64,000 bases of DNA from Cycas panzhihuaensis (lineage: Eukaryota; Plantae; Cycadophyta). The notes below the pieces were generated by a model. The model did not search any database. It saw nothing but the letters and a program-made list of their open reading frames with translations, and was not told the DNA's origin. The stretch is taken from assembly GCA_023213395.1 (NCBI GenBank), contig CM041465.1, forward strand, positions 73,353,741 to 73,417,740, given 5' to 3'. Made by a program: the position numbers and the translations under genes. Below are positions 2,171 to 20,737 of this stretch, piece after piece (position 1 is the first letter of the stretch; each line of letters opens with the position of its first letter).

Positions 2171-2532
2171 CTACATCATAAATTAAGCCATAATTGACTA
2201 ACCTTACACAAAAGTACATGAAGGGGCATTATATTTTAACATAAGGAACCACCTTAAGTTGAACTCACTTGACACCATGTTGTGCATAAATTGTTACAAA
2301 CCTAATTGGAACTTGAGGATAATCATTGAATTCAAGACAACACACAAGTATGCTTAAGAGATTTAATAATTAAAAGACCAATAAGTTTTATTGATAAAAA
2401 ATAAATGATGTTTTACTATAATGATTTTCATATTTTAATAGGTAGTATGGTGTTTATTCGAAAGTTTGTGACCTTTCAATCATACTCTTTTAAATATTAA
2501 ATAATAGTTAATTATTAAATAGGGTTGTAACA

Positions 2533-3900
2533 ATAACCCCTTCTTAAAATGCTTTGTCTTTGAAGCACATTAAAAATGCTAGCATAATGTTGCTTCTTAT
2601 TGATATGAGGATGTCATAATCATTTGGTGTATATCATTGAGTTGTAATTATTGGAAGTTTAAAACAATAGAGAATGCAAATACAAAAGTAAACTTAAATA
2701 ACTTGATGTTATTGTAGACCTTTCTAAATTCTTTGGTAGATGTTGATTACAAAAATCTTGAGTTCCTATATATGCTGTTATTTGTAGAATGAAGAATGTT
2801 GCCAAGGAATCCTGCACTTGATTCTGACTTCAGATTGCTGATGGATGTTATATTTTGAATAATTATTATTTGCAAGATTACTAAATACAAGTCTATGAAA
2901 AGTTGATGTTAGTGTTGATATAAACCATCGTCTTAAAATATAAGATTCTATATCAATGCTTGGGATTTGCTTGGATTCACTAGGGGATAAAATAATTTTT
3001 GTTGACACTAGAGAAACCACTAATATATAATATTAATTATTTGATTCGTATTATTTTATATATTGATTTCACCAACATTATCTTTAAAAGTTTTACTTTT
3101 AGTTTCATAAATATCATTTTTTATATTAGGAGTTGGGTTACGATTTCCAAAATTATTGAATATATTTCTCTAAAAAGTCATTGGTATTATTGCATGATAG
3201 TATTGTTTTAAAATATAAAAGTTTATATACTAGTTTCTAAATTCTGCCTAGGTTGATTAAGACACTAACTTATTATTGCTAGTACTAATACCTTTTTGCT
3301 CGGATTGATCAGGGGTTGTTATTGACATTAGTTAGTTCTCCTTAAATGGATCAGAGGATAGAAATATCATCATTAGCATTAGTGACTTTTTTGGCATATG
3401 CTTAATACCTTTTTGGTTATAAATTATTATCTATTTTTTTAGAAATGGTATTGGCTTTTCATCCCCATCAACTATCAATATTCCATCCTTATTTTCTTGT
3501 TGCTTATTGTCTTTTTCTTGTTGCTTGCTCAAATTATGGGTTATGATTTCCCTTGTGAACTACTTGTAGTTCATAAACCTTTTTTCCTTCTACGTCGTAT
3601 GATCTTGTCCTGCATTATCTTTTAATATAATTGTATTATCATCATCTACCTGCCTTACAAATTCATCTATATGTTCTTCATGGATTTTAGTTGAGTTTTT
3701 GTTATGTAAATATTCTAACCTTCTTAATTGCTCTTTTAATTTTTTGTCTAATGCCAATAAGAGGGCATCATTAAGGCTCACTAATGTCGAAAAAGATTTT
3801 AGGTATTTGAGCTATATTTGGTGAAAGAATCCTTCATTATTTTTGTCTTTATATATGAACTCATGCTTGGCTTCTATGATGTTCCCTATCCAAAGCTTCC
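2533..3900 (-). pseudogene. Decayed ORF module shared with copies B and C (ALDKKLKE...DDNTIILKD), probably gag-derived
   Basis: ORF 3590-3781 (LLLALDKKLKEQLRRLEYLH..HEEHIDEFV..DDNTIILKD) aligns with 9330-9490 (YLLALDKKLKE*VKKLQELH..HERHIDKLV..KDDTSILKA). ORF 2778-3020 aligns with ORF 8844-9209. Confidence 0.75.
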
Positions 3901-4568
3901 CCTACTCTCTTGAGAAATTATAAAGTAGGACTTCATTCATGCTTGATGTTGGTCTATTGCTGATTAAATCTAACTTCTAAGAAAGGCCGCCTTCTACAAT
4001 CTTCTTGGATATATAAATAGTGAATCTTGTAACTTTGTATGTCTTGAGTTGTTAATGATATTACATAAGCAACTCAATGTTATATTATTCTTTCTGCAGT
4101 GTGTTCTTACTATAGTACTAGGTGATATATACAAGGGATTCAATTTATGCATGAGAGTAAATTATGTTACAATTGATTGTTTGATTACATACTAGGACTG
4201 ATGTCACTATATAATGCAAGTTATATAGTGGTGGCTCAATATAGCAAATGATATTAATGTGGGCCTTATTGCTTAGTATGTTGTTGTTATATTATAGCTA
4301 TGGGTTATATTGTTATAATGGTGGGTTAATATAACTTTTGAGGTATTGGACAATATATTGCTTGTTTGACTATAAAGATAGGCAAGATGCGTTATCGTTA
4401 CTTATTAATATAAATACAAGGCAATGATTCAATATGGTAGTTTGACCATGGCTCAGACTCATATATTTAAGGTGACAAATTTATCTCTATTATGAAGGGG
4501 TGTATATAGGGTTATGCTATATATGCAAAAAGGCATATATATTAGGCAATTTGTTTTCATTATAAAGG

Positions 4569-4590
4569 CACACACACACACACACACACA
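4569..4590. repeat. (CA)n microsatellite abutting the rbcL stop codon
   Basis: Visible directly in the sequence. Confidence 0.95.
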
Positions 4591-17365: not shown

Positions 17366-18624
17366 TGTAGTGACCTATTCCATTAAGAATAAATTGGTAT
17401 TTTATTAGAAATCATCATCATCATCATCATCATTATTAGGGAGTGATTCTTTTAATTAATATAAAGTCAATTTTTATATTAGGAAGTCAATATTTTTTTT
17501 AATTAATAATATTATTAAAGTTTATTTTTTAATAGGGAGCTATATTGACACTTATAAATAGAGGAGACCCCTAACTCATTTTGTCAATTTTATTTTTGGG
17601 TTAATCCTAATTTTATTTGGCACTTAGTGCTTGGGGCAATTTTGCCTATTTAACTTTCATTTCAATTTTCTTTTATGTTTTCAGAAGTAAATCTAATTAA
17701 AGATCGCTTTAGTTCTAACCCATCAATGTTCTCTTCTTCTCTATGCCAATACTTTATTAATGTTCATATATTTTGCAATTATTGCTTCCACAACCTAATT
17801 AATACACCTATTGAAGTAGATTATCAACATTCGAAGAGTCACTTGTGCAGCTGCAAAATGCAATACATTTAATCTAGTGAGATAAAATATACACAATCTG
17901 GTGTGTTATTGCATTACTATTATTTCCTAGTTGCGTTAATTACGATATTATTTCTAGATCTATGGTGTGAGCCAAACTGTAGAGAATATACCATCATTAA
18001 TCATGTGCAATGACAAAATAATATTATTTTAAAATCTGTCGTGTGTTATTTCCTAGCTCTATGGCGAACTAAATTTGTGTGCATATTACCTTTGGTCATT
18101 AAATATATCTAACAAGTCTAAGGCACATAAATATTATTAATAAATAAGGAAATACCCAAGATATTATTAAATAGGGAGCATTCCTATTTAAAGAATATTC
18201 TAATATTTCAAAAAAAATTCAAAATTAAGCTTGAACTTTCACATCAAGCCAAAGACTTCTTGCCTCACCTTGTCACCATTAAGACTGCATCATGGTGTTC
18301 TACTAATACCTAAAGAACAATGCTCATCTTTCCTCTATTTGATTGAAGTGCAATATTGGGTTGCATTAGTTCAGCTAATGTGATAACATATTGATTTAAT
18401 ATTAAGTCACAATAGATTACATTTAGCAATCGTAATCATATCTCTTAGCATCGTATCATATCTACATATCATTTTGTTAACATCATTTTAATCTGTAATC
18501 AAATATCTAGTAGTCTTCCTCCAAGCTGAGTTGTGATCTATTTATAATCATTTGTTGTCATCATGGCCATGTATAAGTAATCTACACAATCTCAGTCATT
18601 TGATTATAAAAGGGGGCCACTAGA
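17366..18624 (+). mobile_element. Probable solo or partial long LTR
   Basis: Termini tgtagtgacc and ggccactaga (8/10 inverted repeat), TATA-like cttataaatag at ~17551. No TSD found; the right end abuts (TA)n. Confidence 0.5.
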
Positions 18625-18730
18625 ATATATATATATATATATATATATATATATATATATATATATATATATATATATATATATATATATATATATATAT
18701 ATATATATATATATATATATATATATATAT
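18625..18730. repeat. (AT)n microsatellite
   Basis: Visible directly in the sequence. Confidence 0.97.
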
Positions 18731-20737
18731 AATGGATGCAAAATTAAAAGAAATTTCACTAGAACCTAAATTTACATTATGAGGCTTAACCAAAAGAGAA
18801 AATTTGGGAAATAAACATAAAAGAATTTTTTTTAGGACTGATAAAAGAGTGACAAGCAATGAATATTCTATATTCAAATACACAAGAGAATGGGATCATC
18901 TAAGTTCTACGTATAAATAAGACATGAAAAAGGTTAAATATATTAAAATACGATAAGAATGTCTCTCCAACTAGGAGATTAGTAAAAAAATTAATATTTC
19001 ATAATTAGATGTTCAAATAAATATGCTATTGAATGGTTAAAAGAGTTAGAAGATTTTCTTGGGCTTCAAACATTATAGATGATAACGAAAAAGTATCATA
19101 TGCCACTTTGCATATGTATAAACCAACATTTAATTGGTGGCAAAAATGGTCATAAGTGTAGGAAAAGGAGAATCATATAGCTGTAACTTGGAAACTATTT
19201 TCAACAACATTTAAGGGTCATTTCAAAGATGACACCATTATCTTACTTGAAGGACTTCCTCAATAGATAAATTCACTTGAAGATGGGAAATAGAGAGAAG
19301 GAAAAGGTAGTAAAATCATAGGCAATAGATATGAACCCTAAAAATATGACCCTAAACCATAAGCTACCTCAGAAAAGCATGACAAGATAACTTCTACAAC
19401 TATAGAAAACCAAGTTATAAATATCCATATGAAAGAATTAAATGTCGATTAGAACAAATCAATTGTTAGAAGTTGGGCAATTAAAAGAAATGGCCACTAC
19501 ATTCCTCTATATCCATAAAAAATCCATATAGAAAACAATATAGAAATAAATATTAGCCTAGTTAACCATCTTTGTGTGCACATATGGATGATAATTAGAA
19601 GATTTGGAAAAACCTACCCTCTCGTGTAAATGAAGATAACAATTAGAGGACTCAAAAGAAACTTAATCATATTTCTAGTCCTGCTCTGCACATTGATCCC
19701 AAAGTTGCTATCATAAATCTAGAAGATGTTAATAGAAAATAGTAACTTGATGCAGGAATATCTTGTCAAGTTTTTCCATCATAAAATGAATAGTCTATAG
19801 AAAAATTAACTCCTAACATTGACAACAACAAACATGGTATGCTTATGAATGATAGGAAATCAAGTTTGAAGCTACTAATAAGGGACCAAAAGAATCAACC
19901 AAAGATAGTGACGCAAATATCAAGTTGCATGAGAAAGAGATCATAGCATTAGCATCCTAAAATTACTTAATCACTATATTTTCAAGGATTTGTCCCTAAA
20001 ACCATCATCAATATACCTATTTTCCTTCTCATAGTTGAAGAAATTTTGTTGAATGTCTCTACATTTTATATTTAGTGTATGACAAGAAATCAATAAAAAT
20101 ATCAAGAAATCAAGACCTGTATTCCTAATTATTACCAATTAACTCCTTTCTAAACGAATCAAACTTTACTTTGTATCAACTCTATCTAGTTATCTAATCA
20201 TAATTTTAGATGGAAGATCTTGACAACAGTCTAGAAAGCAAGTGAATATGCTATGGCACTCTCATAAAGCTAGAGGTTATATCCAACCCAAAAATAATGG
20301 TCGACAATCCCATGGTTCAATAGATGATTGACCACATACCAAGACAAAACATCTCTTGGATTATATGTTTAATACTTCTTTTGCAGTACTAGTTGACATG
20401 TGAATTTAGAAGATCTAAACGACATCATGCTGCTCTCACAAGGTCTCTTCCATTCAAGCAAGCCATCAAGGATGAAGCCTTTGAAGAGGGGAGAGCTTGT
20501 AATGAACCTAAATGACATAATTAATCATTAAACAGTCATTAGTATTAATAATTAGGATAAAAAGGAGTAGTGTCTATTTATTATCAAACATGTCCTTTCA
20601 TAGTTAAAGTATAAATATCTAATCACCTCTAACATTAAACATCATTTATTATTATTAATCAATTTATCTTTTGGATATTAGGGTCTTTGGTCATACTTGT
20701 CTCATTTGTACAAGTGTAACCAACTTGGGTCACCTCA
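18731..20737 (+). mobile_element. 5'-truncated pol-less Gypsy-derived element, copy C (relative of A and B), retaining a gag capsid remnant
   Basis: Starts MDAKLKE. Contains capsid-like IEWLKELEDF..DDNEKVSYATLHM..FNWWQ (~19025-19145) and KDDTIILL (~19225). PPT gaagaggggagag precedes a ~240-bp LTR at 20498-20737 sharing aaacatcatttatt and catacttgt blocks with the copy A LTR. No pol. Confidence 0.7.

What the first reader, a model, noticed from the sequence alone, without database searches (positions are those of the whole stretch)
2292..20737. Family of pol-less Gypsy-derived LTR shuttles with a shared ORF module and exchangeable host-gene cargo
Seen: three elements (A 2292-6580, B 8221-12790, C 18731-20737) have related ~240-bp LTRs and Gypsy-type PPTs but no RT, RNase H or integrase; A and B also have Met PBSs and TSDs. 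A and B share a ~1.2-1.4-kb 3' module whose translation is conserved despite DNA divergence (ALDKKLKEQLRRLEYLH..HEEHIDEFV..DDNTIILKD vs ALDKKLKE*VKKLQELH..HERHIDKLV..KDDTSILKA). C has MDAKLKE and KDDTIILL with a gag capsid motif between them, a motif that A and B lack. Upstream of the module A and B appear unrelated: B holds BRCT domains and A holds rbcL, both in the element's sense orientation. Known: gag-only (TR-GAG) and LARD elements exist, and LTR elements can capture mRNAs by template switching. Inference: a non-autonomous lineage with a variable cargo slot in front of a capsid-deleted gag, acting as a gene-capture and exon-shuffling vehicle.
Basis: partly seen in the sequence, partly recalled or inferred. 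Interest (0 to 1): 0.85.

Follow-up and report, generated by a model that had tools for sequence, protein, structure and literature searches.

The report
Decayed LTR elements; one captured BRCT
Two old, protein-less LTR retrotransposon copies in a transposon-rich plant (probably gymnosperm) region are truly related. One carries a spliced piece of a host BRCT gene, a known kind of gene capture, but the proposed "cargo shuttle family" with an rbcL cargo and a third member is not supported.

Summary
A (2292-6580) and B (8221-12790) are real minus-strand LTR retrotransposons. Each has ~210-245-bp LTRs, an initiator-Met tRNA primer site, a polypurine tract and imperfect target duplications. No gag or pol is detectable. 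Their LTRs are homologous, and they share 1.0-1.3 kb next to the polypurine tract at an even 63-68% DNA identity. Only about 70 codons there show a weak coding signal, with no detectable gag similarity.

B holds residues ~4-223 (two BRCT domains) of an At4g02110-like host protein. The piece is in sense, uninterrupted where host genes have introns, and fused in frame into the shared region as a 201-codon open frame. This is a Bs1-type capture of a spliced mRNA.

A's rbcL piece (codons 369-475) splits a (CA)n microsatellite between two 66-bp direct repeats. A plastid transcript is not expected in cytoplasmic particles. It is best read as an ordinary plastid-DNA insertion, not cargo.

C has no significant interior similarity to A or B. 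Its LTR resemblance is marginal, and Pfam does not see its "gag motif".

TE capture of gene fragments is already catalogued at huge scale in gymnosperms. Verdict: a new member of a known kind, of modest interest.

The parts
2292..2532 (-). Element A, 3' LTR (sense start TGTTACAACCC)
   Evidence: Direct repeat with 6373-6580, 176 matches / 31 mismatches, K2P 0.171. Homologous to the B LTRs.
2533..2548 (-). Element A polypurine tract (sense AAGAAGGGGTTAT)
   Evidence: Read directly. Abuts the 3' LTR.
2534..3811 (-). Element A copy of the 3' region shared with B
   Evidence: blastn and global alignment to 8542-9527, 63-68% identity throughout.
3593..3811 (-). 73-codon open stretch in A (LNDALLLALDKKLKE...), the only part of the module with a weak coding signature
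   Evidence: Codon-position mismatch bias 26/15/31, p 0.015. No homologue found. No Pfam hit.
4595..4960 (-). rbcL fragment (codons about 369-475, ending at the stop codon), decayed
   Evidence: Pfam RuBisCO_large 5e-20. PDB Rubisco alignments. About 20 of 106 codons changed plus one stop, mostly G>A or C>T.
4570..4590 (.). (CA)10 half of the microsatellite split by the rbcL piece
   Evidence: Read directly.
5001..5051 (.). (AC)25 half of the split microsatellite; an A-rich tract (4959-4999) lies between it and rbcL
   Evidence: Tandem Repeats Finder.
4503..4568 (.). 66-bp direct repeat flanking the microsatellite and rbcL block (partner at 5064-5127)
   Evidence: blastn 76% identity.
5064..5127 (.). 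Partner of the 66-bp direct repeat
   Evidence: blastn.
6360..6370 (-). Element A primer binding site (TGGTATCAAAG, initiator-Met tRNA type)
   Evidence: Read directly.
6373..6580 (-). Element A, 5' LTR (carries a 33-bp deletion)
8221..8465 (-). Element B, 3' LTR
   Evidence: 92.6% identical to 12546-12790.
8466..8482 (-). Element B polypurine tract (sense AAGGGGGAGGAAT)
   Evidence: Read directly.
8466..9527 (-). Element B copy of the shared 3' region
9445..10047 (-). 201-codon stop-free frame fusing BRCT2, an 81-codon linker and the start of the shared region (ends ...LLALDKKLKE*)
   Evidence: The chance of 81 further open codons is 0.002-0.007.
9688..10285 (-). Captured host fragment: residues about 4-223 (BRCT1 and BRCT2) of an At4g02110-like BRCT protein, contiguous, with one stop and one frameshift in BRCT1
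   Evidence: tblastn with 33 host proteins. Best hit Taxus chinensis KAH9306651, 64-65% in BRCT2. Pfam.
12533..12543 (-). Element B primer binding site (TGGTATCAGAG)
   Evidence: Read directly.
12546..12790 (-). Element B, 5' LTR
18731..20737 (+). Element C: truncated remnant bounded on the left by (TA)53, with a polypurine-like tract (about 20484-20497) and an LTR-like end (20498-20737). Not shown to belong with A and B.
6745..17050 (-). Host element H: an older, decayed Gypsy element (LTRs about 6745-7075 and 16660-17050, own Met PBS and PPT) into whose integrase region B is nested
   Evidence: Its RT is homologous to the RT of the 24754-32905 element. The integrase motifs were read by eye; Pfam found nothing on these short pieces.

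Best explanation
A and B are two separately inserted, long-decayed copies of related subfamilies of a non-autonomous LTR retrotransposon. They are LARD-sized, at 4.3 and 4.6 kb.

They keep only what replication needs in cis: the LTRs, the initiator-Met primer site, and about 1 kb next to the polypurine tract. An autonomous element would have had to mobilise them in trans. That partner was probably a chromovirus-type Gypsy element, but it was not identified.

In the B lineage, reverse transcription incorporated the 5' part of a spliced host mRNA for a BRCT protein. The likely route is template switching between co-packaged RNAs, as in maize Bs1. The result is a chimeric open frame that runs from BRCT2 into the element's own 3' region. 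The copy then inserted into the integrase of an older Gypsy element and has since decayed.

The rbcL piece in A is not cargo. It is a nuclear plastid-DNA insertion (NUPT) that landed by end joining in a (CA)n microsatellite inside A's interior.

C is a separate truncated remnant.

Shown: the anatomy, the homologies, the absence of detectable gag/pol, the contiguity of the BRCT fragment, and the split microsatellite.

Inferred: the template-switch mechanism, capture before B integrated, trans-mobilisation, and the NUPT route.
For: LTR, PBS, PPT and TSD anatomy.

Homology between A and B:
- LTRs homologous.
- Shared 3' region at an even 63-68% identity, highest near the PPT.

No detectable coding capacity:
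- No Pfam domain in the open pieces.
- No tblastn match to any TE protein piece of the window, although that control detects Gypsy RT against Gypsy RT at E 4e-15.

BRCT fragment:
- It covers host residues about 4-223 without interruption.
- Mis-predicted host protein fragments break off into unrelated sequence just before IMYRP, before NKVTHL, after YKFE and after WLED. This marks host introns at sites that are continuous in B.
- It is 3'-truncated with no poly(A), unlike a LINE-made retrocopy.
- 81 further open codons continue in frame into the A/B-shared region (P 0.002-0.007).

rbcL fragment:
- It sits between (CA)10 and (AC)25, which lie between 66-bp direct repeats.
- Its changes are mostly G>A or C>T, as expected for methylated nuclear DNA.
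- By established knowledge, rbcL mRNA is plastid-confined while NUPTs are common.

Literature: Bs1 and template switching (PMC13317346); TE capture of about 400,000 gene fragments per gymnosperm genome (PMC13477047).
Against: - No second copy of either subfamily could be examined, so it is not shown that the BRCT piece ever transposed with the element.
- The rough age of the rbcL piece (about 0.10 substitutions per site, from changed codons) is similar to A's per-lineage LTR divergence (about 0.085). Dating therefore cannot place its arrival after A's insertion.
- Host intron positions are inferred from mis-annotated proteins, mostly of angiosperms, not from the donor gene itself.
- Pfam on short open pieces is weak. 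It also missed the RT and integrase remnants in element H.
- The Gypsy affiliation rests only on the PBS type and on a short peptide-like motif at the PPT.
Confidence: 0.65

Rival explanations
1. A, B and C form a dedicated pol-less Gypsy-derived shuttle family. It has a variable cargo slot in front of a capsid-deleted gag and repeatedly exchanges host-gene cargo (BRCT, rbcL).
For: - A and B share LTRs and the 3' module but differ upstream of it.
- Both gene pieces lie in sense orientation.
- There is a weak coding signal over about 70 codons of the module.
Against: - C shares nothing significant with the interiors of A or B.
- The module has no gag or other protein relatives.
- rbcL has its own insertion scar, a split microsatellite, and is a plastid transcript.
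- A's interior is full of microsatellites, and its LTRs are 17% diverged. Differences from B are therefore expected from decay alone.
Confidence: 0.07
2. A single ancient capture. The shared ORF (LND..LLALDKKLKE...) is the continuation of the captured BRCT cDNA, from the fast-evolving disordered region after BRCT2. The common ancestor of A and B already carried the gene piece, and A later lost the BRCT part by deletion.
For: - An unbroken open frame runs from BRCT2 through 81 codons into the shared region.
- Some host proteins align weakly up to window positions about 9600-9508.
- The shared ORF has weak coding-type substitution bias.
Against: - The shared ORF and linker show no similarity above the shuffled null to residues 200-600 of about 70 host proteins.
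- tblastn finds no BRCT remnant in A.
Confidence: 0.15
3. The BRCT cDNA piece entered B after B had integrated. It would be filler DNA at a repaired double-strand break and was never mobilised by the element.
For: - Repair of breaks by capture of reverse-transcribed spliced mRNA is documented (PMC4516963, in mouse zygotes).
- Only one copy was seen.
- Sense orientation has a 50% chance.
Against: - The in-frame continuation into the element's shared region is unlikely by chance.
- The piece is large, about 600-700 bp, and starts near the mRNA 5' end.
Confidence: 0.13

Closest known systems
Bs1 of maize and other transducing LTR retrotransposons (rice and sorghum surveys; gymnosperm-wide catalogue in PMC13477047; review PMC13317346)
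   Same: An LTR element without its own pol carries an intronless, sense-oriented fragment of a cellular gene. The fragment is fused into a hybrid open reading frame. The presumed route is template switching or read-through during reverse transcription.
   Different: - Only one host fragment is present, the two BRCT domains of an At4g02110-like protein.
- No expression or copy-number data exist.
- The copy is decayed: BRCT1 has a stop and a frameshift.
LARD (large retrotransposon derivative) non-autonomous LTR elements
   Same: LTRs, PBS and PPT are present. The interior has no recognisable gag or pol. The total length exceeds 4 kb. The elements depend on a partner.
   Different: - The LTRs are very short (about 240 bp, against kilobases in the classic barley LARDs).
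- The conserved interior is limited to the 3' 1.0-1.3 kb.
- The autonomous partner is not identified.
TR-GAG elements
   Same: Short LTR elements that lack pol.
   Different: TR-GAG elements are defined by an intact gag ORF. No gag was detectable in A or B. In C a gag-like motif is visible only by eye.
NUPTs (nuclear plastid DNA insertions)
   Same: A short plastid gene fragment sits in nuclear, TE-rich DNA. It is decayed mainly by G>A and C>T changes. It is inserted at a repeat-rich site without element-type boundaries.
   Different: It happens to lie inside, and in the same orientation as, an LTR element. That placement invited the cargo reading.

Membership tests
LTR retrotransposon (structural definition) | Pair of direct LTRs with TG...CA-type inverted termini | tested here: met
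   - A: 2292-2532 / 6373-6580.
- B: 8221-8465 / 12546-12790, termini TGTTAC...GTAACA.
- C has only one LTR-like end.
LTR retrotransposon (structural definition) | tRNA primer binding site next to the 5' LTR and polypurine tract next to the 3' LTR | tested here: met
   - TGGTATCAAAG in A and TGGTATCAGAG in B, 2 nt from the LTR.
- Purine tracts at 2533-2548 and 8466-8482.
- C has a PPT-like tract only.
LTR retrotransposon (structural definition) | 5-bp target site duplication | tested here: inconclusive
   - A: TAAAT / TAAAC, 4 of 5.
- B: TTGGC / TTAGA, 3 of 5.
- This is compatible with decay at the observed LTR divergence.
Non-autonomous LTR element (LARD class) | No gag, protease, RT, RNase H or integrase coding capacity | tested here: met
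   - No Pfam TE domain in the open pieces.
- No tblastn match to the window's Gypsy or Copia protein pieces, with a working positive control.
- Power is limited for very decayed remnants.
Non-autonomous LTR element (LARD class) | Multiple copies mobilised in trans by an autonomous partner with matching LTR and PBS | not testable with these tools
   - No plant genome collection was available.
- A metagenome scan with an LTR-end pattern gave only two chance matches.
TR-GAG | An open reading frame encoding gag (capsid, with or without zinc knuckle) | tested here: not met
   - No gag domain in A, B or C pieces.
- The shared 73-codon ORF has no relatives.
Ty3/Gypsy (chromovirus) derivation | RT-RNase H-integrase order, or chromodomain or integrase remnants | tested here: inconclusive
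   - No pol remnant exists to test.
- Only indirect hints: the initiator-Met PBS, and a short F-[KE]-D-[KE]-x-F..G..V-like reading across the PPT in A, B and C that resembles chromovirus 3' ends. This was read by eye.
Transducing (Bs1-like) LTR retrotransposon | Host gene fragment inside the element, between the LTRs, in sense orientation | tested here: met
   B: 9688-10285 matches host BRCT protein residues about 4-223, E 3e-65.
Transducing (Bs1-like) LTR retrotransposon | Fragment is spliced (RNA-derived) | tested here: inconclusive
   - The fragment is contiguous in B.
- Host introns are inferred only from mis-predicted protein fragments of other species.
- The donor locus could not be fetched.
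Transducing (Bs1-like) LTR retrotransposon | The fragment is carried by more than one transposed copy | not testable with these tools
   - A has no BRCT remnant.
- No near-identical chimeric protein is in the 5.8-billion-protein collection within the length range searched.
NUPT | Plastid-derived sequence in nuclear context with junctions unrelated to TE boundaries | tested here: met
   rbcL codons 369-475 lie inside a split (CA)n array, which lies between 66-bp direct repeats.

The most novel reading that the evidence does not exclude
The A/B lineage might encode a small lineage-specific coiled-coil-like ORF, the 73-85 codons beginning LND..LLALDKKLKE. Captured host domains could become fused in frame to this ORF. 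The family would then act as a recurrent maker of chimeric proteins such as a BRCT fusion, and some of those could be expressed or domesticated in this giant genome.
Probability: 0.08. Interest if true: 0.55.

Novelty: new member of a known kind. Interest (0 to 1): 0.3.

Why it matters
B is a clean, anatomically readable example of an LTR retrotransposon that picked up the 5' part of a spliced DNA-damage-response-type (BRCT) gene and fused it into an open frame. This is the raw material of exon shuffling.

Such captures are already known from maize Bs1, rice and sorghum. They are counted in the hundreds of thousands per gymnosperm genome (PMC13477047). The case therefore adds an instance, not a principle.

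The main value of the re-analysis is negative. An apparent 'family with exchangeable cargo' dissolves into one capture, one plastid-DNA insertion and one unrelated remnant.

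Tried and rejected
1. Shared ORF. Searched the protein collection with A's 73-aa piece: no candidate. 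Tested it and B's linker against about 70-150 host BRCT proteins with phmmer and Smith-Waterman against shuffles: nothing above the null.

2. Other copies of the chimeric BRCT ORF. Only three short host-gene fragments were found, and none carries the module.

Intron positions are therefore only inferred.

4. Family copies in metagenome contigs. A degenerate LTR-end pattern gave two hits, both chance, with no other similarity.

5. Dating rbcL against A's insertion. The two ages are similar (about 0.10 against about 0.085 substitutions per site), so the comparison is indecisive.

6. Coding constraint on the whole module. Rejected, because identity is flat across it and control frames give comparable z-scores.

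7. Leader homology beyond the PBS between A and B. Not convincing.

8. Rfam and tRNA scans of the window. Nothing found.

9. Species identification from a Copia RT. Best hits are only about 60% identical (Ginkgo, Pinus, Taxus). The source is probably a gymnosperm whose proteins are not in the collection.

Full report
CONTEXT

The window is AT-rich (GC about 0.29-0.40) and is a mosaic of nested, mostly decayed LTR retrotransposons.
- LTR pairs lie at 6770-7070 / 16696-16995, 24754-25118 / 32542-32905, 35953-36500 / 43196-43743, and 43742-44039 / 49057-49354. A further repeat pair lies at 50616-50868 / 54796-55056.
- Copia gag, integrase and RT domains lie at 39111-42416.
- The best protein matches are to gymnosperms. 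The BRCT piece matches Taxus chinensis at 65%. A Copia RT matches Ginkgo, Pinus and Taxus at about 60%.
- The source is therefore probably a gymnosperm whose proteins are not in the collection.

ANATOMY OF A AND B

Both elements lie on the minus strand.
- A has LTRs at 2292-2532 and 6373-6580. These show 176 matches, 31 mismatches and a 33-bp deletion, K2P 0.171.
- B has LTRs at 8221-8465 and 12546-12790 with K2P 0.083.
- Read in sense, each 5' LTR is followed after two bases by TGGTATCAAAG (A) or TGGTATCAGAG (B). This is the primer site for initiator-Met tRNA (established knowledge).
- Each 3' LTR is preceded by a purine tract.
- The flanking 5-mers are TAAAT/TAAAC for A and TTGGC/TTAGA for B. 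These are imperfect but acceptable at this age.
- B is nested in the integrase region of an older Gypsy element H. H has LTRs about 21% diverged and its own Met primer site and purine tract. The order of divergence (H older than B) is consistent with the nesting.
- With a conifer-type rate of about 2.2e-9 per site per year, the insertions would be tens of millions of years old. That rate is my own recollection, not a tool result.

WHAT A AND B SHARE
- The LTRs are homologous. Local alignment gives z 7-14 against dinucleotide shuffles, while H's LTR as a control gives z 0.3-0.5.
- The interiors share 2528-3798 with 8542-9512.
- A global alignment gives a flat 63-68% identity over the whole stretch, up to 78% near the purine tract.
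- Beyond the primer site, the leaders are not convincingly alike.
- The central 2.2-2.5 kb show no similarity.

IS THE MODULE CODING?

Most of it matches equally well in several frames, which indicates DNA-level homology. Only one stretch behaves somewhat like coding sequence.
- This stretch is 73 codons in A (3811-3593). In B it corresponds to 9525-9239, broken by a stop and a frameshift.
- Mismatches by codon position are 26/15/31 (chi-square p 0.015).
- 35 of 69 residues are identical, against 25-28 expected from random placement of the same number of mismatches.
- The same test gives z 3.0-3.1 in stop-ridden control frames elsewhere in the module. The signal is therefore weak.
- The peptide has no Pfam match and no relative of comparable length in the large protein collection.
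- It has no similarity to host BRCT proteins above a shuffled null.
- Nothing links it to gag.
- Across the purine tract, A, B and C can all be read as F-[KE]-D-[KE]-x-F..G..V. This recalls the C-terminal end of chromovirus polyproteins. I read it by eye, and it is a lead only.

ABSENCE OF GAG AND POL
- Pfam scans of the open pieces of A, B and C found only BRCT and RuBisCO_large.
- Pfam on such short pieces is weak. It also missed the RT and integrase remnants of H.
- I therefore used every open piece of at least 30 aa of the window as a tblastn query.
- Gypsy RT pieces of the 24754-32905 element find H's RT at E 4e-15, and another Gypsy remnant at 52889-53197.
- Nothing hits A, B or C apart from A-B and LTR self-matches.
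- 'Pol-less' is thus supported, within the limits of decay.

THE BRCT PIECE IN B
- The 191-aa ORF 9442-10017 carries a BRCT domain (PTCB-BRCT, 2e-11).
- An exhaustive profile-free search found 738 relatives. The best are long (1100-1460 aa) plant proteins named BRCT domain-containing protein At4g02110-like or transcription coactivator. They match at their residues about 95-225.
- tblastn with 33 of these proteins maps host residues about 4-105 to 10285-10031 and about 90-223 to 10038-9688.
- That is both N-terminal BRCT domains, contiguous, with one stop and one frameshift in BRCT1. There is no hit anywhere in A.
- Identity to Taxus is 51% in BRCT1 and 64% in BRCT2. It is 53-61% and 71-74% between functional orthologues of Taxus and angiosperms. 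The copy is thus a moderately decayed pseudogene-like fragment with no domain-specific preservation.

Evidence that the fragment is spliced is indirect.
- Several short, evidently mis-predicted host proteins run into unrelated sequence immediately before IMYRP (P0102, P0116, P0153), before NKVTHL (P0080), after YKFE (P0102) and after WLE(D) (P0085, P0155).
- These breaks mark host introns at positions that are continuous in B.

Other features of the fragment:
- It begins near the start codon (MGTLFQGVRF...).
- It is 3'-truncated and has no poly(A). This argues against LINE-type retroposition and fits template switching inside a particle, the Bs1 mechanism reviewed in PMC13317346.
- After recognisable host homology ends (about 9688), the frame stays open for 81 more codons and enters the A/B-shared region at 9527. 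This gives a 201-codon stop-free stretch.
- The chance of 81 open codons is 0.002 (geometric) to 0.007 (empirical, from the elements' own sequence).
- Either the linker is host coding sequence from the fast-evolving region after BRCT2, or the capture produced an in-frame fusion with an element ORF. Both readings favour acquisition before B integrated.

THE rbcL PIECE IN A
- 4595-4960 on the minus strand encodes Rubisco large-subunit residues about 369-475, up to the stop codon.
- About 20 of 106 codons are changed and one is a stop.
- Most changes are what G>A or C>T would give: V>I, G>D, G>S, A>V, four R>H, E>K, P>L, Q>stop. This is the expected decay of methylated nuclear DNA.
- On the plus strand, the order of features is:
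  - repeat R (4503-4568)
  - (CA)10
  - antisense rbcL
  - an A-rich tract (4959-4999)
  - (AC)25 (5001-5051)
  - repeat R' (5064-5127, 76% identical to R)
- The simplest reading is that a plastid DNA fragment was inserted into a (CA)n array lying between two copies of a local repeat. That is an insertion scar of its own.
- rbcL mRNA is made and kept in the plastid, so co-packaging into a cytoplasmic retrotransposon particle is mechanistically unlikely (established knowledge). NUPT insertion by end joining is commonplace.
- Dating does not help. The estimated decay of the piece (about 0.10 per site) is close to A's per-lineage LTR divergence (about 0.085).

ELEMENT C
- C is bounded on the left by (TA)53.
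- It has a purine tract followed by TGTAATGAACC, which resembles the A/B LTR start.
- Its interior has no significant similarity to A or B at protein level (none at E<=10) or DNA level.
- 'MDAKLKE' rests on a 12-nt AT-rich identity with BLAST E 1.1, at the microsatellite edge.
- 'KDDTIILL' is an isolated short match.
- The LTR similarity is marginal (z 3.5-3.8, 1-2 of 300 shuffles) and rests on one motif of about 30 bp.
- A gag-like W...W motif is visible by eye around 19000-19260, but Pfam does not detect it in the short pieces.
- C cannot be used as the 'undeleted' form of the module.

WHAT COULD NOT BE DONE
- No plant genome collection was available.
- The single metagenome scan, with a degenerate LTR-end pattern, returned two chance matches.

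CONCLUSION

A and B are members of one non-autonomous, LARD-sized LTR lineage. B is a Bs1-like transducing copy with the twin-BRCT N-terminus of a host gene. A's rbcL is most likely a NUPT. C is unrelated or only distantly related.

The 'exchangeable cargo slot in front of a capsid-deleted gag' is not supported. TE-mediated capture of gene fragments is well known and has been catalogued at very large scale in gymnosperms (PMC13477047). The finding is therefore a new member of a known kind.

Noticed in passing
window 8466-8562 (minus strand): B carries about 80 extra bases between the ancestral module end and its working polypurine tract. They begin with a second purine-rich tract followed by an LTR-start-like 11-mer: in sense, TTCAAGAAGAAGCTTT then TGTTATGAACC, at 8536-8562. 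A aligns to this inner junction. It looks like a partial LTR-start duplication from aberrant priming or template switching.
   Followed up: partly
window 43742-49354: A young LTR element has LTRs 99.3% identical (43742-44039 / 49057-49354) and a Met-type primer site (TGGTATCGAGC at about 44044-44054). It directly abuts the 3' LTR of the Copia element 35953-43743. It carries Copia-type RT similarity at about 47128-47600.
   Followed up: partly
window 50616-55056: A repeat pair of about 255 bp (80% identical) lies 4.2 kb apart and encloses a Gypsy-RT-like piece (52889-53197). It is similar in size to A and B but unrelated in sequence, and no clear TG..CA termini were seen.
   Followed up: partly
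window 12000-16000 and 6000-8000: There is a strong positive GC skew (0.26-0.39) over the body of the decayed Gypsy element H, and the opposite skew over 20000-32000. This may reflect strand-asymmetric C>T decay of old elements lying in one orientation.
   Followed up: no
window 10599-10681 and 11195-11280: B's unexplained 5' half contains short tandem duplications: a 32-bp unit repeated 2.5 times, and a unit of about 45 bp repeated twice. The 5' half has higher GC than the rest and no Pfam or RNA-family match.
   Followed up: partly
window 20995-22078 (minus strand): A Copia RT remnant, homologous to 41004-42197, lies immediately right of element C.
   Followed up: partly
window 4959-4999: An A-rich tract (AAAAATAAAATAAA-like, 2.9 copies) follows the antisense end of the rbcL fragment on the plus strand, between rbcL and the (AC)25 array. 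It could be filler DNA or a grown microsatellite.
   Followed up: no
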